Source: Entomortierella parvispora E1425
Lineage: Eukaryota; Fungi; Mortierellomycota
Direction: 5' to 3'
NCBI GenBank assembly: GCA_020891255.1
Contig: BQFW01000013.1
Coordinates: 248,001 to 312,000, forward strand
Length of the DNA stretch: 64,000 nucleotides
Position numbers and translations under genes: made by a program. A model generated the notes under the pieces. The model was not told the DNA's origin and made no database searches. It worked only from the letters and a program-made list of their open reading frames with translations. Of the stretch, positions 3,501 to 49,948 are shown piece by piece (position 1 is the first letter of the stretch; each line of letters opens with the position of its first letter).

Positions 3501-5164
3501 GGCTTGAGATTCTACCGGAAGAAAGCGAGGCCAATCAGTCTCTAGCTGCAGACAGACGCGCCTCTCGTCGCTTGACCCAGCAGCTTTCGGCATATTGGTC
3601 GTGATGCTGTTCGCACAACAGACATCCACCTCTCTCCCTCTCTCCATTTCTCTCCCTCTCTCTCTTCCCTCGACAACAAGGGGAAAAGTGTGCTGCGTGC
3701 TGATCTCGAGCAGGAACAGGGTGGTGATGGGCAGGAGACACACAGGCGCAGCTCTTTCTTCCCTCTTTCTCGCCCTTTGCACTTGCACTCTTGGCCGTGT
3801 TTGCCAGTAAAAGAGGCTTACGGCCGTTGCTGTTATATTTCAACGATTACCCCTCAATAAGCTATCTGGGTGGACGTCTTGATCTGACGCTGACGGCTGT
3901 CAAATATCTTGTATCTAGATAACAGAGTTTCAACAGCACGGAGCTCCACTGTCCACTTCGTGCTATGGACAAAACTTTTCGGTGGACGAGCTTATCTAGA
4001 AAAACAACAGCGACGCTAGCCAAGTTGTGGTTAACAGTAACCATGCCCCTGAAGTAAGGGTGACTGGTGGCAACGTGAGAAGTCCTACACCAACAACATG
4101 ACCGTCCTAGGGAACAGTGGCAGGTTGACTTGGAGGTCAGATCGGATAACAGCTATGTGAATAGAGACAATGACAGACAGCTGGATACTACCTCACCCTC
4201 AGTAGTCTAGCGAACGTTAGGCATCGAAAGAAGGGGACACAAGAGCCAATCTGCCTTCCTCATCTGGCAGCACAAGATGATGGTGTGCCTGGACAAGTTG
4301 TTTGGATGTCGTGCCTTGGTGGAGTGACTTGCAGCAGGGGTCCAGGTAGTTGGCCCTTTGTTGCCACAATGCAATCTGTTATTGGTGTCGACTGGGCACA
4401 AGAGAGCGTGCGCACGAGCAAAGAGTCCAGATACCACTTGTTCTTGCCTTTCTTTTCTCGTCTGTGCACAGGACAACAACTTGTGCCTGGTAGATCTTGT
4501 TTTTTTCTCGTTTTCTACTCATCCATCATTTCTTCGACATCGCCCTTTCTTCTTTCCTTCCTAGCTATGTCCTTGAGGACCAATCTCATCGATCAAGAAT
4601 TGGCGACCGTGTAGACAACTGGGAGGGTTGTTGTCCTTGATCGCAGCACGTCCAAAAGAACGCGTGCATTTGACCATTTCTGCAGTTGTTTGAGGCACAC
4701 TCCACAAGAATCCGAAAAAAAAAACCCCCCCCCGAAATCTCGATTTTGATCAATTGTTGTTCGCTTGCAAAGTTTCCCTTCTTTATGTATTTCTGGTTGT
4801 ACTGTCGTATAACCGAGAGTATCGTTCTATTCTTGCGATGGAAACCTTGGTTACGATTGAAACAAATCCTTAAGCCACGATAGAGGGAGCTGCGATCACA
4901 GGATTTCGTCTTGGGGAGGTTGCTAACAAGCCATCTTTAACAGATATAAAATGGAAAGAGCTCAGTGAACTCGGTACAACTGAATTGGCATCACAACCTG
5001 CATTCAATACAAATCCCCCCTCCAAAAAAAAGAACATGACATAGAAAAAAGCGAAAACCTACAGTCCAGACGCCAACTCGGCCGGTAGACAAGCCCAGGG
5101 AGTGACCAACCTATTTTTTGCTGGAAAATTGATTGATCAGAAAGGAAAAGAGGAATAAGGTCAT

Positions 5165-5768
5165 CATGTTAGTTACAATGTTGCAATTGCAATTGTCATG
5201 TCTTAGTAGTTATGAGCAATTAGAAGGCTTGTCTTACAGGCTGAATGAGAAGAACAGAAACTCCAAGGAAAAATACAGGTGGCCATGTTAGTTCCAATGT
5301 TCCGATTGTCATGTCTTCGTCGTTATGAGCAACTAGCAAACTTGACGTACGAGCTCATTAAGAAGAACACAAACACCAAGGAGAAATCCAGGCGGCCATG
5401 TTAGTTCCAATGTTGCAGTTGTCATGTCTTCTTCGTTACGAGCAGTTAGTGGGCTTGTCTTACAGGCTGATTGAGAAGAACAGATACGCCAAGGAGAAAT
5501 ACAGGTGGCCATGTTAGTTCCAATGTTGTGATTGTCATGTCTTCGTCGTTATGAGCAACTAGCAAAGTGGACATACCCGCTGATTGAGAACAACAGAAAA
5601 GCCAAGGAGAAATACAGGTGGCCAGGTTAGTTCCAATGTTGCATTTATCATGTCTTCGTCGTTACGAGCAATTAGTGGGCTTGTCTTACGGGCTGATTGA
5701 GAACAACAGGAACGACGAGGAGAAATACAGGTGGCCATGTTAATTCCAATGTTGCCATTGTTATGTTT
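5165..5768. repeat. Tandem repeat with a 113-bp period, about 5.3 copies, alternating A/B subtypes
   Basis: The GGCCA(T/G)GTTA anchor recurs at 5281, 5394, 5507, 5620 and 5733 (exact 113-bp spacing). Odd copies carry TTAG(T/A)(G/A)GGCTTGTCTTAC; even copies carry CTAGCAAA(C/G)T(T/G)GAC. Confidence 0.95.
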
Positions 5769-10541: not shown

Positions 10542-11328
10542 ACAAATACCTGGCTTCATTGGACGAGTACTTTTCAAGTCAATCCGGTCTAGACAAATAC
10601 CCAGCTTCATTCTGTGCAATAAAATCTCCACTCACGGCGTGTACCAATGTTTACAATGTTCAAAAACTGTTGGGGATCGGTACGCTCCAGCGTGATAACG
10701 TCGCACAGTTTGTAGGCTGCAAGTCTTTGTAATAACTCTTCCGAATCCCAAATATCGCCTGCACAAAGAAAACAACCTAGTGCTGAAATAAAAATGCATC
10801 CACGAGAAAAGACATATTATCCATGCTCTCGAAACTGACAACACTGGAGCCTGTAGATGTGAAATCAGGAACCGCACCTCTGAGAAGATTGCAGTTCGCC
10901 CCATGTGTTGTTACGCCCCGAGATACCAGCCACCCTCAAGAGAGTGCAATAAGCCCTCTGTGCCTGATCCAAAGCCCGCCGAATGAAGAAACACCCCCAA
11001 TTTCAACACAACTGAACCGTCTGCACGGGTACCGATCATTCGTAAAACGGTCGCCGATCCACGTCTTTGGATCGCCTTTCCTAATCTAATAGCAGCCGAT
11101 AAAACTGCTATTATCCTGAAAGATCGCCCCACATGTCCTCCTTTGGGTCTTCAAAATAGTCAACACTGCTGTTGTTTTATAATACGTTGAGGAGGTTGAG
11201 CTGTGCGACTAATCTGCAAGTTGATTCCTGTCCCTTCTTTCTTTTTTTCTTTTTTTGGGTAATTTGATTTCTTGGCATATCGTAACGAGACCGTGGCGAG
11301 GAATGGTCGATAAAACAAAAAAAAAAAA

Positions 11329-12134
11329 TTAATCTCTTCCTCTGCCACGACCGCCACGGTCGCCACCACGTCCACGTCCACCGAATCCACCTCTTCCACC
11401 TCCACGGGCTATGAGTTTAAAGGAATAAAAAGAGACGAAAAAAAGCGGTTAACAGTCTGATCCTCAATGCCTTTGTCCCTTGATGCCTGTGTTCCTGGAT
11501 ACCGATTCCATCGTTTCCATGAATCTTAGGGTCGCCCAGTATATGTATCTCCCAAAGTGTGGGATCCTGTGATCCATAGATCGATCCATGATCTGCCTTT
11601 TCGTAAACATGATCGAAAAAAGACGCGAAAACAACGATGGGTATGACAAGGAGACAAAAAAAAAAAAAGAGTTGGAAAAATCGCAGGACTTGCCTTGTGC
11701 TCTTGCTACTGTTGCTTTGCCTCTTCCAAGACCAATACCCTTGCCCTTCATGGCTGATGCGCCCTGGACCTTGAACATGGGTGCATTCTTCAACATGTCT
11801 GGTACAATGAAGAACTTGATATGAGAACCTCGGACATAGACCTGATCCAGTTGTGTCACACGACCATCCCTTGCTGTCATTTGAATGTCCTTGAGTTGAA
11901 TGTTCATGTTATCCTCGGCTAATTCAATCGAGAGTTCAACGATGAAGCGTTAATGTCTGGAGAGTCTCTTTCTGATGCATTCCATAGCCAGGGAGACGGA
12001 GCAAAATAGAATGGCCTGAAAGGTTCCTCACCCTCAAAAAGGACGCCGCGGTAGACAGATCCGGTCTTGAGCTCGATCGTGATGGTGTGGCCCTGGGCCT
12101 CATGCAACAGCTTTATGGGTACTCCGATCGACAT
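11329..12134 (-). CDS. SMD3: Small nuclear ribonucleoprotein Sm D3, 3 exons
   Basis: [16 protein letters not shown]...AEDNMNIQL...[23 protein letters not shown], plus an RG-rich tail in exon 11329-11408. Confidence 0.97.
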
Positions 12135-12525
12135 GGTGAATGTGTAGTTTGAATAGAGATGGAGACAGGAATGACAAAGGCAACGTTGTGTTGAGCATCG
12201 CCTTCAATGCAGAGATCTAAAGGTCGTCGAGACCGCCTTTTAGGCGCGAATAATACGTCACCGGATCTGACTTGAGCGTGATTTTAATTTGCCACCAAAC
12301 TCAGATGACCACCTCTGTTTTATGCTCCCCCCAGTCGTTGAGGAATGGATATGAGTAAAGCCTACAAGTTGAGATAATAATATATAATGTATTTTACAAG
12401 AGAGAGTAGGTAATGATAACAAAGAGCACATGTTGCTCTGATCTACGCCTAGAGGGGGGAATACGTCCCTCGACGCTGAATGCTATGGGTAATAAAGGGG
12501 CGCGGAAGACTGCCGCGACTGGCTC

Positions 12526-40146: not shown

Positions 40147-40314
40147 AGAAAAAAAATCACCCTGATTTCCTTCCTACCTTCCTATCAACAACCACTCCCC
40201 CTTCCTGGTAACTGTCTGCGATAGATATGGAAAGATGATCGTTTTTCTCTTGCCCACCCAAGTGTCACAGTACGACTGTAAATAAATAACTTTACCAAAA
40301 CAGCAATAAAAAAC

Positions 40315-40397
40315 GGGTCACACGATTTTACTGTTGATTTCTGTATAGAGTTATGAACCTTACGTCTGAGAATGAACGTTGCGTCTGAAAATAGAAT
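40315..40397 (+). repeat. Left terminal inverted repeat (83 bp); TSD ATAAAAAAC at 40306-40314
   Basis: 76/83 identical to the reverse complement of 49586-49668 by manual alignment: 5 mismatches at positions 5-9 and 2 internal. Confidence 0.93.
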
Positions 40398-42104: not shown

Positions 42105-42947
42105 ATGTTGTGGCAGGGGTCTTTCTATGGCAAGGGGATAACGTAGGGAAAGTCAATCCCAAGCACAGTTCCCCAAGATTCCGTCTTCTGCGACCGAAAT
42201 GTAACGGCCAGAACCAGGCATACATTCTGGTCGCTGTAGTGTTCCTTGTCAGGAGATTCCGGGAACTTTTGGACAACCTACCCGGGAAAGATAAAAAAGA
42301 ATTATTCCGGCCTTCTCGAGATGGGTACCTGTTCAGAGATTGGGCCCACGACCTAGGGCATCAAGAGCCAGTTTTTCAGGGAGTGACAGGACAAGCTTAT
42401 TGGTCCATGTACGACCTACTTTTGAAGAAGTATGCCGATTACCAATATATCAGCAGGAACATCGGGAGGGAATACGCGTTCGAGCCAACTATCCTCTTCA
42501 ATTGGGTCAAGGAGCTTTCTGAGCTGAGTGCAACCTATTTCCGTCGTGCTTTTCCGACGTACAAACGCAGTGGCGAAATGTACAGAGCAGGGGGAAATGA
42601 ACAGCAAGAGGATAGAGCGGAAGACGAAGAGAAAAAACGCTCAATCACGGTCACGGTCACGGTCACTATCACGGTCAAGGTCAAGGTCAAGGTCACGGTC
42701 AGTAGAATATGGTGCCATATCAACCACCCTCGCGGATAGGTCGGCCAAACGGATAAAGCTAGATCTCGTCTCTCAGCAATCTGGTAGTTCACGGCCGGCC
42801 TTAGCGGGGTTGGGAAGCGAAACGGATAGAAGTCAACTTCGTTTAGATAGTCTGTCGCCATACATCGGAGAGCAACTTACAGCCATGTCTGACGCGATAT
42901 ACGACCTTTCCCAGAAGGTTATCCAGTTATCACAGCTTTTGCAGTAA
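42105..42947 (+). pseudogene. Second transposon gene: Myb/SANT(trihelix)-like domain, RS tract and C-terminal coiled coil; one frameshift; true start uncertain
   Basis: A splice ataac|gtaggg...gtcag|gagatt gives an in-frame RFRELLDNL...FRDWAHDLG...TGQAYWSMYDLLLKKY. A +1 shift at the A6 run 42632-42637 leads into SRSRSRS...SDAIYDLSQKVIQLSQLLQ. Confidence 0.55.
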
Positions 42948-43525: not shown

Positions 43526-46500
43526 ATGAGCAGAAACCCCCTCTACTCCATCGAAGATATGGATCTCGCGTTGCGAGTCGCTTCAATGGTGAAGGACGCC
43601 AAAATCAATCCCGATAAACTTAGAGAACTTCTCCCTCTAATCAACCGTATTGCTGATCAAGGTGGGGATCGAGAGAGCAAGAGGGCACCCTCCCCATCGC
43701 CTCTGGGAAGAAGCCCCCAGAAGCCTCGAACCGCGAAGAGGGCGAGACGCCTTCTCGCCCTTCCTCCGTCAATTTCTACTTCAGAAGAAGAGTTCCTGAG
43801 CTGGGCAAATCCAAATCGCCGTCTCTCCACCCCTTCTTCCTCTTCTTCTTCGGAGGGTTTTCCCGAGTTTGCGTCGAAAGAAGAGTAAGTAAACATCAGC
43901 TGAACTTTTGAAGCCATTCCTCCTTGTGGCAGTCTACTGAGATTCTTCCTATTCAAAACGTAGAACGCGCGTCAAGCATCAAGATGTCATCACCATCGAG
44001 AGCGACGATGAGTCTCCGTATGTTTCTACTTGTCTTGTTACTGATTTGTACGATCATCATATTAACGTCTAGCCTGTCTTTTTTTTTTTTTTTTTTTTTT
44101 TTTTGCGTAAACGGTTAATAGTGACTCTAAGGTCTGTCGCGAAAAGGACGGTTCGCGACTAAGGTACCAACTAGTGACCGACCTTTGTTCTTTTCATATC
44201 AAGCTCAACTTTCGATATCAAACTGACCATCTGTTTCACCCACTTGTCTATTATTTGCCATTTTCAACGAAGCTACCGCGAAGCAGCCGCTTTTCGTAAG
44301 ACTGACGCTGTTACCCTCCTCGCAGACAGAGAAATTTCAAACACGAGCACTAAACTTACCTTGACGACAACCAGATCTGGGCATGGGTATGTTCAGTTCT
44401 AAAATCTCGAAATGAACGCTTTCCTTGCTAATTTACTCATTATTTCGCCTTTGATCCCGCTTTTCTTTTCTGTCTAGACTTGTGGCAAAGTTTTCGAAAA
44501 GGCTCTCCCCCTCCCCAGTTGCTGCACCTGCTACACTTGCCAAGACCGGAGCTTGTGTGTCTGCCCCGTCAATTGCGCGGTCTATTTCCCCAGTTGCCAG
44601 GTCTGTTTCCCCAGTTGCCAGGTCTGTTTCCCCGTTTAGCACACCTTCAGCGCTCGATAAGACCGTAAATACCGCGCCTGTGGTGCCCACCCCCCCGATT
44701 GCTGCGCCTGTGGTGCCTACCCCCCCAATTGCCGCACCTGTGGTGCCCACCCCCCTGATTGCCGCGCCTGTGGCGCCTGCCCTCCCAGTCGTCGCATCTG
44801 TCAAACCTGCTACTTGCACCAAGTTCGCAATTGACACGGCATCCACTCCTGCGGCCAAACCTATGACCTTACATCCTAATGGATTAAGAAGATCATATTC
44901 TGGGTAAGGGCTTTCATCCCATAAGCACTGTCATCCTTCCTTCATATATCTGAAAGCTGACGTATTCTACTGTGTATAGCCCGCTTCCTGTTTCTCGTCC
45001 TGTTTCTGGCCCTTTTATTGGTCCGATTGCCAAGCTTCCTGTTGCTGGTCCACTTGATGGTCGTCGATTTGCTGGTCATCCATTTGCTGGTCCATATGTT
45101 GGACACCCTGATGCTGGTCCATATGCAGGTCTTGCAGGCCCATTTGCTGGTCATCTTGCTGGCGTCTCTTTTGCTGGTCATCCAGTTGCTGATCCGTTTG
45201 TCTGTTATTACCCCGGCTCTCGTCATGAAGTGAGAAAACCCTGCTCCAGGTATGATGATCAGAAGTTCAATTGACTTTGGTGTGTTCCTTTTTTCTTTCG
45301 ATCTAATCTCTCTTTCTTTTATAGCTCAAATAACCCTATCGTTATTCCAGATGACCTGTAAGTTTTTTTTTTTTTTTTTTTTTGAACGTCGACGACAGTT
45401 CCTTGATCCCAAGCCATGGTGAGGATCGATTGCTAGTGGTCCTAACCGCCATACTCCTATGTTTTATATGCTAGACCTACAATTTCTGTCAGGTATTCGT
45501 TCAAAGATACCCCCGGCGCTTCCTTCCTCGCTAAAAGTGATGGGGTCGGTGCTGAGGACTCACCAAGCGTGGCGCCTGCTCCTACTACAAGAGATACTTC
45601 CGGTACTTCTCATACTTCTGATACTCCTGATGATGTATTTGCGAATGTGGTTAAGTCTCCCTCAACTGGGTATGTTCGCCACTTGATGACGTTTTATGTT
45701 GATCCCTGTCGTCTTTTTTCTGTGTCGTTCTCGTACGTTCCCTGGTATTTATTCAGATTCTTGTCTTTTTTTAGGCTGCATGTCGGTGCTACGCCTGCTG
45801 ACGAGCAGAAACTAAAGTCCTCGAGAGAGGCAGCTTCCTCAGAAAATAGCAGAGGGTATGGATACTACTGCATCTCATCTCGTTCCTCTCGGGGCTATAG
45901 TCTGTCTGCTAACTTTTTTTTTTTAAAAAAACGAATTGTAGAAGCCTCGAGTCAAGCGACGAGTTCCCAAATGGAAACATCAAGTTTAAGCGCAATGTCC
46001 AGGACTATGACACCATTTTACTCGCTCGGAGTGTAGGCTGGGCGACTCAAGTTTACCGGCGCAATATCAAATCTGATGGGTCAATGATCAAAATCCACAA
46101 AAAGTGCCTTGGTATTCTGCGATGCCCAGCTCCTGACTGTCGGTGGGTGCGGCGACCAAAAGTTAATGGACCTGTTGATTACGTCACAGGCGAAACGCGT
46201 ATCGACATGTCGGACACACCCGAGAGCCAATTTTGCGCTATCCACGAGAGAGCTTGAACATCTGCCATGTACAGCTGTCCTGGATTTGGTCGAGGAAGGG
46301 GGATGCATCAAGTTCACCCATCGCGGTTACCATACACATCAGGCACCAATCCCGAAGCGCGCGTCGCAGGATGCGTTGAATTACCTGGAGACGATTGTTT
46401 CTACGGCTCCTGAAAGCAGACCCAAGCACCTTCTCCACAAGACGGAGTTGCGAGACCCCATCAGCCGGAAGTATATGGTATATCGCAATCTCAGCTATGT

Positions 46501-49243
46501 GAGACACCTCCGGAACAAGATCATACACAAGAATCGAAGCGCCAACGACCTTGGTTCGCTAGCGGCTTTGGAGGAAGTGGTCGGGTCCTGCTTCGTAGTG
46601 TCCTCAAGTATTTCATCGTTTGATGGACACATATCAATTGTCATTGACTTTATCCGAGAGCACGCTCAGACACTGGATTCTTCGTTGTCGACGGATTCGA
46701 TTCATGATATTGTAACGGACGACCACTACGCCGATATCTGCGTTACGGTCACCTCGGCCTTCAGTGATTTTTGTTGACCGGACAGTACCGATAACAATGA
46801 CGATCCACCTTGGCAAGACCTCCGAACACTACAAGAAGCATTTCCTGGCCGTATTCGACGTCCTTAATTATCGAGACTGGGACGACTTCGACGAAAACTT
46901 TCCTGGGATGACCTGTGACTTTGCAGATGCAGAGCGAATTGGATTCAAAGACGCTGTTCTTGAGCGTTTTGACATCGCTCCTGAAGACTTCGTTCTCGAG
47001 CGATACTTTGGCTACTGCATTGTCCATTACGAGCGATCGGTAGTCCGGATTCGCAAAAATGGCGCCATTATTCCACCGGGAAAGGAGATGGACTTCTACG
47101 TTGACGCCATGATGCTTGCATCCAGCTCTGTGACCCGCTTCGAGTTCGATAATATGGTAGCCGGATTATTAGAGAGGTTTCCCAAGATCCGCCGTTGGCT
47201 TGACTTCTACCTTCATCAAGATCGTTCCAAGATTATTTTCCCTGCACTTCGGGATGTTGCAGCGAAGGAAACAATCAGTAAAGACACCAACGCCCAGGAG
47301 AGTCTGGGAGGAGACTTCAAGTTATTCGTCAAGCGTACGCACCCAACTTGCTCGATCATCCAGGGGGTCTCAGCGATCGTCAGATACCAGGAGAGCTTCA
47401 TGGAGGACTTCGAATTCGTGTGTCAGGGTGGTGTTCTTCGCTACAAGGACAGCAGGAAGGAAAATCCTACACAGAGGTCTCGATCATCCAGAGAAGGTGC
47501 AAAAAATCGAAGGAAGACTGCTGGGATGAAGTTGCGGGCACAGCACGACAGCTTCGTGCCAAGAAAAGCCACTGGTAAATGTCAAGTACACCAATGACGG
47601 TCGAGCACCGGACACCACCAAGGCCCTTCTTGACGAAGAAACCAACACCAAAGCAAAGGGTGCCAAAAGAAAGCGTGTCATCGAACCCAGGGACACAGGA
47701 AGGGACACCGAAGGCAGAGGTGCAGGACGGCCAAGAGGAAGTCGTAATGTATTGCCCTCCATCAGATCTGTCGGAGATATCGACTGGGATACCTTTGGGA
47801 TCCCATGGAGGAGACAAGAGCCTGTTGCGAATCGATTCACATTCGAGAACAGTTGCCCTGTCGACACAACTTTGATGGCCTGGTTCCTGCTATCAAAATA
47901 TTCTGGGGCGACTCTCCCATCAGCCGTCGCAAGATCAAATGCGGGTCAAACGTTGTTACGAGTTATGGAGGAGATCCGGGCCACACGGTACGACTACGCG
48001 CGAGAGCTGTGGTGCACTGAGGCGATGGAGCTAGCTGGAGATCAGCACCATGACCTCTTCAAGAGTTTGGAGGAGGTATTTCTTGATATTCTACCTGGTT
48101 TGACGCGTTTCGAGACAGTAAGAACGACGGAGTGCACCCGATTGGAATGTCCACAGCGGATCGAAATGTTCACCCCAAGAGCAGTTGTGATGTCGGCCTG
48201 CGCGAGGATTACCCAGAGTTCTTTTGACCAATCATGGACTCGTCAGACTGAGTTTACTTGTTCAACCAAGGTCGACATATCATCTGGGGGTGATTCCGAG
48301 ATGATCGGAGAGGACACAAGAGTGGAGTCGCTGATCAATGTCGATGGAGGGCTTGAGTTTTGGCACGCCTGCGCAGGAGAGAGAAAATCAACAGGGCCGA
48401 TAACTTTGACAACCCATCCCTATATGTTGGTTCTCGACTTCCTTCAATCCGCTTATGAAGTCAATGGAGAAGCAGGACCATGTATACCTCCGGCGTTTCT
48501 GACCATGAACCTCAAGGATTACAAGCGAGCAGCCATAATGTACAGTAACGGGACGCACTTCTGTTGCACGGTCTTTGCTGGTACGGTTGCATTTGTGTAT
48601 GATGGAGCGAGAAGAGGAAGACTCATCCGCAATGTACCAATCAAGTCGGTCACTCATCCCCCCTGGCTACCGAATCATTCATGTTTGGTATATTATTGAG
48701 CGCCCAGACCCGGAGGAGGACTTGTCGCTGATCGCAAAAGATGTCGTTTCGATGGGCTCAAGCAATGGCAGCCCAACTGCAGATGCCGAATCACATAGCA
48801 CCAGTACTGTTGACAGGAGTGATACCAATCCGTGCAAGGAGTCTGCCAAGCCTCAGAAGGGCTCTCCGTCTGTCAGTGCTAATGGCAAGGCCAAGAGTAC
48901 TGCCAGTAGCGAAACCAAGGTGATTGGCACTCGCCGAAGCCAAAGAGGAGAGGTCACTTTGCCACCCTTTCAAGACACTCTCAAGACCCGCCGTAGTAAG
49001 AAGACCTACTACCCTGCTGGTCTTAGTGTTTGTTCTGTCAGCAAGAAAGGGAAGCGGCCTGTTTGCGGTGCTTGCAAGGAAGAGCTCGAGCGCGATAGTC
49101 GCAGGTTTGTTTTTACAACTATCTCGGGGGATGATATTAAGAGAGTAGACAATGTCTCTTACCACTTCAACCACAGCTGCATGGCAGCGCTTCCTGTGGG
49201 CCATCATGCCGAGGCTCAGAATGCGCTAGATAGTGAACTTTGA
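43526..49243 (+). pseudogene. Multidomain transposase gene (low-complexity N-terminus, GCM, MULE DDE, USP-like protease, PARP-type Zn finger); about 10 introns; 4 frameshifts in the last exon
   Basis: The last exon starts at 45942. It contains GCM motifs EFPNGNIKF, GWA, KKCLGILRCPAPDCRWVRRP and FTHRGYHTHQAP; catalytic candidates STDS, TCDF, GYCIVH and TNAQES; NDGRAPDT; NSCPVD with GTHF...YDG; and CGAC...YHFNHSC. Confidence 0.85.
44581..44780 (+). repeat. Coding minisatellites in the transposase N-terminus (21-bp x about 3; 30-bp x about 3.5)
   Basis: TCTGTTTCCCCAGTTGCCAGG repeats encode SVSPVAR; GCGCCTGTGGTGCCCACCCCCCCGATTGCC-type repeats encode APVVPTPPIA. Confidence 0.9.
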
Positions 49244-49585
49244 GCAAAGGAGAGAAGGAAAGAAAGAAGAGAAAGAAGAGAATAAAGCTGGTGATTTTTT
49301 GAACGTCTTTTTGTCTTTTCTGTGAGGCGAGTTTTATTGAGCAAAGTGCGTAAAGTGAAGTTCGAGCCCAACTGTTTACAGCTTGAACAAGTCCAGTCGA
49401 CTATCAAGATGGCTACAAAGCTATATCCCTCTGTCTGTTTTTTCGGTGTCAACAGGCAGCACACACAGGCCAGCTGCTAGTCCTTCGTCGCTGGATTGAG
49501 CCAGGGTTTGGAAGTGGTCTGTGAGTAACGCTGGCATCCCACCCATTCTATTTTCGGCAAACGTTCATTCTCTGGCATCCCACCC

Positions 49586-49668
49586 ATTCTATTTTCAGAC
49601 ACAACGTTCATTCTCAGACGTAAGGTTCATAACTCTATACAGGAATCAACAGTAAAATCTATACACCC
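49586..49668 (-). repeat. Right terminal inverted repeat (83 bp); TSD ATAAAAAAC at 49669-49677
   Basis: Reverse complement reads GGGTGTATAGATTTTACTGTTGATTCCTGTATAGAGTTATGAACCTTACGTCTGAGAATGAACGTTGTGTCTGAAAATAGAAT. Confidence 0.93.
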
Positions 49669-49948
49669 ATAAAAAACCAATGGGAAGTGTCTATAATTCT
49701 TTGGTGTAGATGAAGGAAGACCGTGAGATCAAACTCTCAAGGCCAAAGCGCTGTTGATGTCTCATATTATCATAATCCATCGGCGATTCATTCTTCAGTC
49801 GCCTATTGAGGTTTTTGGTGACAGACGGTGTATTGAATATGAGGAGGGAGAAAGAACCAATGACTATCGATAAAACATGTTGGAAAGAAAAAGAGATGGA
49901 AGTGGAAAGAAAGAAGGGGACGGTAGCGAAGGAATGAGGCAGAGGAGC

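What the first reader, a model, noticed from the sequence alone, without database searches (positions are those of the whole stretch)
47752..48690. Ubiquitin-specific-protease-like domain fused to the transposase
Downstream of the DDE core and the NDGRAPDT motif lies a papain-fold-like domain. It has a Cys box FENSCPVDTTL (Cys at 47854), paired Cys knuckles (ECTRLEC, TCS...HAC) like the USP fingers subdomain, and a His box YSNGTHFCCTV...FVYDG (His at 48556, Asp at 48601). Plant Mutators are known to carry Ulp1 SUMO proteases, but this looks like a USP/C19-type deubiquitinase in the same polypeptide as the transposase. Inference: the element may remove ubiquitin from histones or from itself to open target chromatin or escape host degradation, which would be a transposon anti-defence module.
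Basis: partly seen in the sequence, partly recalled or inferred. Interest (0 to 1): 0.85.

Follow-up and report, generated by a model that had tools for sequence, protein, structure and literature searches.

The report
USP-fold protease module inside Mutator transposase
A jumping gene of the soil fungus Entomortierella parvispora carries, in the same protein as its cut-and-paste enzyme, a well-conserved domain with the fold and catalytic residues of ubiquitin-removing enzymes; Pfam's USP models do not detect this domain family, and its nearest look-alike by shape is the uncharacterised human protein C14orf28/DRIP1.

Summary
ORF 47752-48699 holds a Cys box (Cys 47854), four knuckle cysteines, and a His box (His 48556, Asp 48601).

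An AlphaFold2 model of a 51%-identical uninterrupted relative (pLDDT 86.9) matches only USP deubiquitinases in the PDB (Foldseek E to 3e-12; VIA Z 14-16 over the whole domain). The triad is kept in 62/64, 52/53 and 51/51 relatives.

The domain belongs to a Mutator/IS256-type transposase. Its order is GCM-type DNA-binding domain, D-D-CxxH-E core, NDGRAPDT motif, AT-hook-like stretch, USP fold, PARP-type zinc finger. The element is 9.35 kb with 74-nt TIRs and a 9-bp TSD.

The window's copy is broken by four frameshifts; the one at 48658 cuts the last strand of the fold. A 99%-identical sister copy is annotated as one spliced 1582-aa gene model, and two diverged metagenomic elements have uninterrupted 1070- and 1092-aa ORFs; all three keep every module in one frame.

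No Pfam USP model detects the domain. Its closest structural relatives are other long GCM/SWIM-labelled proteins, mammalian C14orf28/DRIP1 and the Drosophila FB-NOF protein. I found no paper describing it.

Enzymatic activity and the proposed anti-defence role remain untested. Verdict: real, a new variant of a known kind (transposon-borne ubiquitin/Ubl proteases).

The parts
40306..40314 (.). 9-bp target site duplication ATAAAAAAC (left)
   Evidence: Same 9 bases directly outside both element ends
40315..40397 (.). left terminal inverted repeat (starts GGGTCACACG)
   Evidence: 74-nt arms 40324-40397 / 49586-49659, 97% complementary; homology with sister copy L001 starts at 40307
42110..42739 (+). 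second, upstream ORF of the element (209 aa), function unknown
   Evidence: Same 209-aa ORF translation listed at L001:4765-5394; gene called there at 4593-5394; no Pfam hit
43526..43888 (+). likely first coding exon of the transposase gene (N-terminal, low-complexity region follows)
   Evidence: Residues 15 onward of the sister copy's gene model P0065 match this ORF almost exactly, with a few substitutions and one missing Ser
45952..46354 (+). GCM-type (WRKY-GCM1) zinc DNA-binding domain, broken by a 2-nt deletion at 46245
   Evidence: Family profile A2 hits mouse GCM1 1odh at E 1.3e-8; Foldseek hit to 1odh; Pfam GCM in 3 of 9 relatives; indel
46685..47312 (+). Mutator/IS256-type DDE core: D 46694, D 46917, CxxH 47016/47025, E 47298 (TNAQE); extra T at 46768
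   Evidence: Invariant D, D, C..H, TNAQE columns; model's best PDB matches are the ISCth4 transposase chains (best E 1.4e-5); weak Pfam Transposase_mut
47564..47564 (+). extra A in an A run: frameshift between the DDE-core frame and the USP-domain frame
   Evidence: Pairwise alignment with intact sister copy L001; the window's own annotated protein P0068 stops just after it
47593..47616 (+). NDGRAPDT motif (N, D, G, P, D invariant in the family)
47725..47748 (+). GRPRGSRN, AT-hook-like basic GRP motif just before the domain
   Evidence: Conserved GRPxGSxN in the family consensus; AT-hook identity is my reading of the motif, not tested
47797..48694 (+). USP-fold cysteine isopeptidase domain (GIPW ... 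WYI). Catalytic Cys 47854, His 48556, Asp 48601; knuckle Cys 48133, 48148, 48259, 48370. An extra C at 48658 shifts the last strand (48665-48694) into the next frame
49052..49180 (+). C-terminal PARP-type zinc finger (CX2C...H...C)
   Evidence: Profile A4 hits PARP1 zinc fingers at E 6e-4; Pfam zf-PARP weak in P0009/P0082; UniRef names the sister fragment 'PARP-type domain-containing protein'
49586..49668 (.). right terminal inverted repeat (ends ...ATACACCC)
49669..49677 (.). 9-bp target site duplication ATAAAAAAC (right)

Best explanation
Window 47797-48694 encodes a compact USP-fold (clan CA, ubiquitin-specific-protease-like) cysteine isopeptidase domain. It has a Cys-His-Asp triad, an aromatic residue after the catalytic His, and a four-cysteine, presumably zinc-binding, 'fingers' insert.

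It is not a captured host gene. It is an integral module of a Mutator/IS256-type transposase with this order: GCM-type zinc DNA-binding domain, DDE core with CxxH, NDGRAPDT motif, AT-hook-like GRP motif, USP fold, PARP-type zinc finger. The element is 9.35 kb with 74-nt TIRs and a 9-bp TSD.

Shown: the fold, residue conservation, domain order, the single reading frame in relatives, and the element boundaries.

Inferred: in intact copies the module is an active ubiquitin or ubiquitin-like (for example SUMO) isopeptidase. The transposase's DNA-binding parts would bring it to transposon ends and to the DNA breaks made during transposition. There it would strip Ub/Ubl marks from the transposase itself or from nearby chromatin or repair proteins, stabilising the transposase or steering repair or silencing in the element's favour.

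The copy in this window is a recent pseudogene (four frameshifts, 98.5-99.4% identical to the sister copy) and cannot make the fused protein.
For: Fold:
- AlphaFold2 of P0002:550-880 with alignment A1 gives pLDDT 86.9 and pTM 0.84.
- Foldseek against the PDB gives 368 matches at E<=1e-3; all 50 listed rows are USP-family enzymes (USP18, USP7, USP14, USPL1, USP28).
- VIA-align gives Z 14-16 over 215-249 residues spanning model residues about 12-320, to CYLD, USP35, USP30, USP1, USPL1, USP46 and USP7.
- Profile A1 against PDB sequences gives USP46 as the top hit (E 0.008), aligned at the Cys box and at the C..lP.lL fingers/palm motif.

Catalytic layout:
- The Cys is the first residue of the long helix 41-57. 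The His sits just before strand 270-276 and the Asp just after strand 279-283.

Conservation among sequences covering each column:
- Cys 62/64; His 52/53; Asp/Asn 51/51; Phe after His 51/53.
- Knuckle cysteines 61/62, 62/62, 56/59 and 55/56.

One polypeptide:
- The sister copy GJJ75407.1 (P0065, 1582 aa) is annotated as one spliced gene model (5746-nt gene for 1582 aa) that reads through all modules. Downstream of about 46084 the window's ORF pieces abut, so the GCM-to-zinc-finger part looks like one exon.
- Uninterrupted ORFs are confirmed at the DNA level in L004 (1070 aa) and in L002/L003 (1092 aa).
- L002 is a roughly 4.5-kb element flanked by TIR-like arms around this ORF.

Transposase type:
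- ISCth4 (IS256 family) and GCM1 are the best PDB matches of the N-terminal model.
- GCM1 profile hit at E 1.3e-8; invariant D, D, CxxH, E; 9-bp TSD and TIRs.

Precedent for active transposon-borne deubiquitinases: Helitron VTD domains (PMC9741609).
Against: - No enzymatic test has been done.
- No Pfam USP model (UCH, UCH_1, Peptidase_C98) detects any of 21 members even at E<=1, so this is a distant branch whose chemistry could differ.
- The canonical USP oxyanion Asn five residues before the Cys is not conserved here. This is my reading of alignment A1 against established knowledge of the USP Cys box.
- The second zinc-knuckle pair is not a CxxC.
- No RNA data could be obtained, so a single transcript is inferred from reading frames only.
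- The window copy itself is broken.
- The target, the Ub/Ubl specificity and the benefit to the element are all inference.
Confidence: 0.65

Rival explanations
1. The domain is a self-processing protease. It would cut the long transposase precursor in cis, as coronavirus PLpro (also a USP fold) cuts its polyprotein and as was proposed for OTU-MULE fusions. This would release the DDE part from the C-terminal parts.
For: Babu et al. 2006 proposed polyprotein processing for a papain-like (OTU) domain fused to Medicago MULE transposases (PMC1702500). The triad is conserved. Long poorly conserved linkers flank the domain.
Against: I saw no conserved Gly-Gly or LxGG-type site in the linkers. The only near-invariant LGG lies inside the catalytic TNAQESLGG motif of the DDE core, an unlikely cleavage site. 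All folds that match are isopeptidases acting on Ub/Ubl.
Confidence: 0.12
2. The domain is a non-catalytic ubiquitin/SUMO-binding or structural module (a pseudo-protease). It would recruit the transposase to modified chromatin or support oligomerisation.
For: The mammalian protein closest by shape, DRIP1/C14orf28, has no known enzymatic activity (PMC10318531). The family is missed by the USP sequence models. The canonical oxyanion Asn is not conserved (my reading).
Against: Near-invariance of exactly the Cys, His, Asp/Asn and the aromatic residue after His, across proteins only 19-51% identical in this domain, is what purifying selection on catalysis predicts. Binding-only domains usually lose these residues.
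Confidence: 0.12
3. The domain is a host USP gene fragment captured by this one element (as Pack-MULEs do), or a separate neighbouring gene, and not part of the transposase.
For: MULEs are known to capture host gene fragments (established knowledge). In this window the reading frame is interrupted on both sides of the domain.
Against: The same domain sits at the same position in diverged relatives (21-53% identity) as one uninterrupted ORF. The interruptions here are 1-nt indels absent from a 99% identical sister copy. The best fold matches are other long GCM- or SWIM-labelled proteins with the domain at the same relative place.
Confidence: 0.03

Closest known systems
Canonical USP/UBP deubiquitinases (MEROPS C19, Pfam UCH PF00443; e.g. 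USP7, USP46, USP18, CYLD)
   Same: Same fingers-palm-thumb fold over the whole domain (Z 14-16). NTC Cys box at a helix N-terminus. H-aromatic His box followed by D/N 15 residues later. C..lP.lL motif aligned to USP46. C-terminal aromatic strand.
   Different: Not detected by PF00443, PF13423 or PF15499 even at E<=1. Only 8-17% identity to solved USPs. The oxyanion Asn at -5 is not conserved. The cysteine knuckles are arranged Cx4C ... C ... C instead of two CxxC pairs. It is embedded in a transposase.
C14orf28 / DRIP1 (dopamine receptor-interacting protein 1), vertebrate orphan protein
   Same: Best match of the model in AlphaFold DB Swiss-Prot (mouse E 2.7e-16, human 1.9e-14, TM 0.56/0.59) and in the ESM Atlas by shape (TM 0.64/0.64). 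It is also the first hit by language-model features for both the window's domain and the most divergent relative tested (0.97 and 0.96). Ozhelvaci and Steczkiewicz 2023 already classed it as a papain-like deubiquitinase-type domain (PMC10318531).
   Different: It is a stand-alone protein of about 310 aa with no transposase. No significant sequence match was obtained. I could not test common descent because no tool gave me its sequence.
120.7 kDa protein of the Drosophila FB-NOF transposable element (P16320)
   Same: Its C-terminal residues 770-1056 match the model (E 3e-10, TM by query 0.50, above most canonical USPs). It is a transposon protein of similar length with the domain at the C-terminal end.
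   Different: The similarity is structural only. Its N-terminal and core parts were not examined here. That NOF belongs to the Mutator superfamily is from my memory of the literature and was not tested.
Plant KI-MULEs (Kaonashi) with Ulp1/C48 domains, and Medicago MULEs with OTU domains
   Same: A Mutator-superfamily transposase carries a papain-like Ub/Ubl protease domain C-terminal to the core. The OTU case is from PMC1702500. The Ulp1 case is established knowledge.
   Different: The fold family differs: this is USP, not Ulp1/adenain or OTU. The host kingdom differs. The accessory domains also differ (GCM-type finger, PARP-type finger).
Helitron/Helentron-encoded VTD and OTU deubiquitinase domains
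   Same: A transposon-encoded deubiquitinase sits in the main ORF. Some were shown to be active in vitro, some were later domesticated, and they were proposed to protect proteins needed for transposition (PMC9741609).
   Different: They belong to rolling-circle elements, not DDE elements. VTD has a D-x-H active site and lacks the aromatic gatekeeper. The present domain has the canonical order and His-Phe.
USPL1 (Pfam Peptidase_C98), SUMO-specific isopeptidase with a USP fold
   Same: A compact USP fold among the top structural matches (Z 15.6). It shows that this fold can act on SUMO instead of ubiquitin.
   Different: No sequence-model match. Specificity determinants were not compared.

Membership tests
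USP fold superfamily (clan CA, C19-like) | Fingers-palm-thumb USP fold | tested here: met
   Foldseek PDB: every row shown is a USP-family enzyme, E down to 2.6e-12. VIA-align Z 14-16 over about 12-320 of 331 residues. Model pLDDT 86.9.
USP fold superfamily (clan CA, C19-like) | Catalytic Cys at the N-terminus of the core helix (Cys box) | tested here: met
   NTC/NSC motif; the Cys is residue 41, the first residue of helix 41-57; Cys in 62 of 64 relatives.
USP fold superfamily (clan CA, C19-like) | His box: catalytic His followed by an aromatic residue, and Asp/Asn after the next strand | tested here: met
   His 52/53, Phe 51/53, Asp 48 plus Asn 3 of 51.
USP fold superfamily (clan CA, C19-like) | Four-cysteine zinc site in the fingers | tested here: inconclusive
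   Four near-invariant Cys, but the spacing Cx4C...C...C differs from 2x CxxC. Metal binding and geometry were not testable.
Pfam UCH (PF00443) / UCH_1 (PF13423) / Peptidase_C98 (PF15499) | Score above the family's gathering threshold | tested here: not met
   No hit at E<=1 for the window ORF or any of 21 aligned members. Only a weak profile-to-sequence hit to USP46, E 0.008.
USP fold superfamily (clan CA, C19-like) | Hydrolysis of ubiquitin or Ubl isopeptide/peptide bonds | not testable with these tools
   Needs probe and substrate assays.
Mutator (MULE) / IS256 transposase superfamily | RNase H-like DDE core related to IS256-family transposases | tested here: met
   Five of the model's six PDB matches at E<=1e-3 are ISCth4 transposase chains (E 1.4e-5 to 3e-4, prob 1.00); the sixth is GCM1. 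Hermes follows. The core region of the model has pLDDT 80-94. Pfam Transposase_mut scores only E 0.03-0.1, below threshold.
Mutator (MULE) / IS256 transposase superfamily | D, D, CxxH, E signature | tested here: met
   Invariant D, D, C-x2-H and TNAQE columns. Window coordinates 46694, 46917, 47016/47025 and 47298.
Mutator (MULE) / IS256 transposase superfamily | Long TIRs and 9-11 bp TSD | tested here: met
   74-nt TIRs, 97% complementary. 9-bp ATAAAAAAC on both sides. No matching TSD was seen at the sister copy L001.
Mutator (MULE) / IS256 transposase superfamily | N-terminal WRKY-GCM1-type zinc finger | tested here: met
   Profile A2 against mouse GCM1 1odh, E 1.3e-8. Foldseek 1odh E 1.6e-5.
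KI-MULE type Ulp1 (C48) protease | Ulp1/SENP (adenain-like) fold | tested here: not met
   No SENP/Ulp1 structure among the listed matches; all are USP-family.
C14orf28/DRIP1 family | Significant sequence or profile match to C14orf28 orthologues | not tested
   Only structure and language-model similarity are available. No tool returned the C14orf28 sequence, and the sequence searches did not report it.

The most novel reading that the evidence does not exclude
The domain founds an unrecognised, transposon-borne branch of the USP fold. This branch travels with GCM-MULE transposases across eukaryotes (fungi, and by structure also the Drosophila FB-NOF protein and other long GCM/SWIM-labelled proteins). 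Vertebrate C14orf28/DRIP1 would be a domesticated copy of it. In the element, a PARP-type break-sensing finger and the deubiquitinase would act together at transposon-induced DNA breaks to erase ubiquitin/SUMO damage or silencing marks.
Probability: 0.3. Interest if true: 0.8.

Novelty: new variant of a known kind. Interest (0 to 1): 0.62.

Why it matters
Transposons that carry ubiquitin or ubiquitin-like proteases are known: Ulp1 and OTU domains in plant MULEs, and VTD and OTU domains in Helitrons. The Helitron VTD domains are active enzymes that were repeatedly domesticated.

In the literature I could search, a USP-fold module inside a DDE transposase is not described, and Pfam's USP models do not detect it. 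If it is active, three things follow:
- It adds a new deubiquitinase family.
- It gives a tractable system for asking why mobile elements need to edit ubiquitin marks. The single ORF of about 1100 aa sits in elements as small as about 4.5 kb and could be tested in yeast.
- It offers a concrete origin and a testable biochemical function for the human orphan protein C14orf28/DRIP1.

The same protein also shows a true GCM-type DNA-binding domain outside animals.

Tried and rejected
- **Pfam on all window ORF pieces and on 21 domain members:** nothing relevant.
- **phmmer of the window ORF against PDB sequences:** only chance hits.
- **Word-indexed homology search with profiles A1 and A3:** only a few close Mortierellaceae or metagenome relatives and no named distant ones, so taxonomic range by sequence could not be widened.
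- **Organism names in the AlphaFold DB cluster hits:** masked, so I make no claim about their taxa.
- **Reads:**
  - No RNA run was listed.
  - Nothing was laid, so the four frameshifts could not be checked against reads and transcription could not be assessed.
  - No letters of 49243-49285 were sent to any search tool afterwards; I worked beside them.
- **Zisupton/KDZ hypothesis (my first guess):** rejected. The core matches IS256/Mutator and has CxxH and a 9-bp TSD.
- **Ulp1-type protease:** rejected by fold.
- **Self-cleavage site search:** no conserved GG site in the linkers (my reading).
- **Programmed frameshifting as an explanation for the broken frame:** rejected. There are four indels (-2, +1, +1, +1), all absent from the sister copy.
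- **Literature:** ten searches found no description of a USP fold in MULE/NOF transposases. Marquez and Pritham 2010 (Phantom) is not held.
Full report
**1. What is in the sequence**

ORF 47752-48699 (+, 315 aa) is present as described.
- Cys of FENSCPVD at 47854.
- His of NGTHFCC at 48556.
- Asp of FVYDG at 48601.
- Four further cysteines at 48133, 48148, 48259 and 48370.

The same frame is open upstream to 47530. It contains NDGRAPDT (47593-47616) and a GRPRGSRN motif (47725-47748). Pfam finds nothing in this ORF or in the neighbouring ORF pieces. A plain sequence search of the PDB gives only chance hits.

**2. It is a conserved family, and the motif residues are its invariant columns**

An exhaustive HMMER search of 1.84 billion representatives found 64 relatives at E<=1e-3, of which 40 are at E<=1e-10. 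A 21-sequence alignment (A1) shows these shared features:
- an NTC Cys box;
- a Cx4C knuckle and two further cysteines;
- a Y.LAA..Y.N..HF His box;
- YDG;
- a terminal WY strand.

Over all retrieved sequences that cover each column, conservation is as follows:

| Residue | Conserved |
|---|---|
| Catalytic Cys | 62/64 |
| Catalytic His | 52/53 |
| Phe after His | 51/53 |
| Asp or Asn | 51/51 |
| Knuckle cysteines | 61/62, 62/62, 56/59, 55/56 |

Pairwise identity within the domain is only 19-51%, mean 28%. That is close to the GCM domain (32%) and the zinc finger (34%), and well above the downstream linker (18%). This pattern indicates selection on the catalytic residues.

**3. The fold is USP**

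AlphaFold2 of P0002:550-880, an uninterrupted relative 51% identical to the window, was run with A1. It gave mean pLDDT 86.9 and pTM 0.84.
- Foldseek against the PDB returned 368 matches at E<=1e-3. All 50 listed rows are USP-family enzymes (USP18, USP7, USP14, USPL1, USP28).
- VIA-align gave Z 14-16 over 215-249 residues spanning nearly the whole model. The matches were CYLD, USP35, USP30, USP1, USPL1, USP46, USP7 and USP18.

The catalytic Cys is the first residue of the long helix. The His precedes a strand and the Asp follows the next strand, 15 residues later. This is the USP arrangement (established knowledge).

At the sequence level, the A1 profile's best PDB hit is USP46 (E 0.008). It aligns at the Cys box and at the C..lP.lL motif of the fingers/palm junction.

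No member reaches any Pfam USP model even at E<=1. The family is therefore a distant, unannotated branch of the fold.

An aromatic residue after the catalytic His is the 'gatekeeper' typical of deubiquitinases. The VTD paper mentions the motif (PMC9741609); where it sits and what it means are established knowledge. Its presence favours Gly-Gly-directed Ub/Ubl cleavage over general proteolysis. This is inference.

**4. It is part of a Mutator-type transposase**

Cluster look-up identifies the organism as Entomortierella parvispora. It also finds a sister copy annotated as one 1582-aa protein, P0065 = GJJ75407.1. That protein reads without interruption through GCM-like domain, core, KYTNDGRAPDTT, the USP fold (...FVYDGARRGRLIRNVPIKSVTHPPGYRIIHVWYIIERPD...) and a C-terminal zinc finger. 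It is a spliced gene model (5746 nt for 1582 aa). Downstream of about 46084 the window's ORF pieces abut, so that part looks like one exon.

Two diverged elements from metagenomes were confirmed at the DNA level as uninterrupted ORFs with the same order:
- L004, 1070 aa.
- L002/L003, 1092 aa.

L002 is a roughly 4.5-kb unit in which TIR-like arms flank this ORF.

The N-terminal family profile (A2) hits the mouse GCM1 DNA-binding domain at E 1.3e-8. An AlphaFold2 model of the N-terminal two thirds has pLDDT 80-94 in the core. Its best PDB matches are the IS256-family ISCth4 transposase (E 1.4e-5) and GCM1 bound to DNA, followed by Hermes.

Invariant D, D, C-x2-H and TNAQE columns give the MULE signature. 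They map to 46694, 46917, 47016/47025 and 47298. The C-terminal CX2C...H...C finger matches PARP1 zinc fingers (E 6e-4).

The element has 74-nt TIRs and a 9-bp TSD, ATAAAAAAC, at 40306-40314 and 49669-49677. These agree with the boundaries noted earlier in this scan (s1-201074). The GCM reading agrees with s1-201126.

**5. State of this copy**

The window's element aligns with the sister copy (L001) at 98.5-99.4% identity. In the coding part it differs by 14 substitutions and four frame-breaking indels:

| Position | Change | Context |
|---|---|---|
| 46245 | -2 | GA repeat |
| 46768 | +1 T | T run |
| 47564 | +1 A | A run |
| 48658 | +1 C | C run |

The 47564 indel separates the DDE frame from the domain's frame. 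The 48658 indel moves the last strand of the USP fold into another frame. The window's own annotated proteins are accordingly fragments of 266 and 203 aa.

All four indels lie in simple runs, so assembly error cannot be excluded. The neighbouring 685-aa host ORF is intact, which mildly favours real mutations. I could not check reads. No RNA run was listed.

**6. Nearest relatives and the literature**

In AlphaFold DB clusters the best matches are long proteins with the domain in the same relative position:
- a 1082-aa 'GCM domain-containing protein', residues 641-966, E 2e-24, TM 0.69;
- a 1150-aa protein;
- an 861-aa 'SWIM-type domain-containing protein';
- a 1232-aa 'GCM domain-containing protein'.

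Ordinary USPs come only after these. In Swiss-Prot models the top two matches are mouse and human DRIP1/C14orf28 (E 2.7e-16 and 1.9e-14). Rank 9 is the C-terminus of the Drosophila FB-NOF 120.7-kDa protein. The ESM Atlas puts the C14orf28 cluster first by shape. It also puts it first by language-model features, for both the window's domain and the most divergent relative tested.

C14orf28 was classed as a papain-like deubiquitinase-type protein in 2023, without any transposon link in the text I searched (PMC10318531).

Known transposon-protease combinations are:
- OTU-MULE in Medicago (PMC1702500);
- Ulp1 in plant MULEs (established knowledge);
- active VTD and OTU domains in Helitrons (PMC9741609).

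Ten full-text searches found no description of a USP fold in a MULE or NOF transposase. A survey of Mutator diversity does not mention any protease (PMC6446971).

**7. How it most likely works**

Shown: a transposase that carries a USP-fold domain with an intact triad, between DNA-binding modules.

Inferred: the domain is an active Ub or Ubl isopeptidase, brought to transposon ends and breaks by the GCM domain, the AT-hook-like motif and the PARP-type finger. It would remove Ub/Ubl from the transposase or from nearby chromatin or repair factors. The compact USPs it resembles act on ISG15 (USP18), SUMO (USPL1) or ubiquitin (CYLD, USP7), so specificity cannot be read from the fold.

My estimates:

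| Claim | Probability |
|---|---|
| USP fold | about 0.97 |
| Same polypeptide in intact copies | about 0.93 |
| Catalytically active | about 0.7 |
| Serves the element by editing host or self ubiquitin/Ubl marks | about 0.5 |
| Specifically an anti-defence function | about 0.25 |

The rivals are self-processing, a pseudo-protease, and a captured gene. They are weighed in their own sections.

**8. Verdict**

This is a new variant of a known kind (transposon-borne Ub/Ubl proteases). It is of moderate to high interest, mainly because of its breadth and its possible link to C14orf28/DRIP1.

Noticed in passing
window 45952-46354: The transposase's N-terminal DNA-binding domain is a true GCM-type domain (profile hit to mouse GCM1 1odh at E 1.3e-8, plus a fold hit). 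Babu et al. 2006 describe the GCM1 family as exclusive to animals. The scan noted this separately as s1-201126.
   Followed up: partly
window 49052-49180: C-terminal CX2C...H...C finger conserved across the family. The profile hits PARP1 zinc fingers (E 6e-4). A DNA-break-sensing type of finger next to a deubiquitinase-like domain is suggestive, but it was not tested.
   Followed up: partly
window 42110-42739: A second ORF (209 aa) lies inside the element upstream of the transposase gene. The same translation is listed in the sister copy (L001:4765-5394), where a gene is called. It has no Pfam hit and its function is unknown.
   Followed up: partly
window 45494-45665: A 172-nt block is present in this copy but absent from the otherwise 98.5-99.4% identical sister copy L001. 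It lies upstream of the GCM domain, probably in an intron or linker region.
   Followed up: no
window 46245, 46768, 47564, 48658: All four frame-breaking indels relative to the sister copy lie in homopolymer or dinucleotide runs. 13 of the 14 substitutions in 45666-49668 are transitions. Real slippage mutations and residual assembly errors could not be told apart.
   Followed up: partly
L002:6883-6960 and 11304-11383: The compact relative's TIR-like arms are built of sub-repeats containing CACAGTG followed by an A run. This is reminiscent of the V(D)J recombination signal heptamer and A-rich nonamer, and may be coincidence.
   Followed up: no
Nothing was laid, and no letters of these places were sent to search tools afterwards.
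   Followed up: no
L001:2946-2954 and 12172-12180: The sister copy shows no matching 9-bp duplication at its ends (CTAAAATAA versus GTTATCAAA), unlike the window copy. Possible causes are recombination between copies or decay of the flanks.
   Followed up: no
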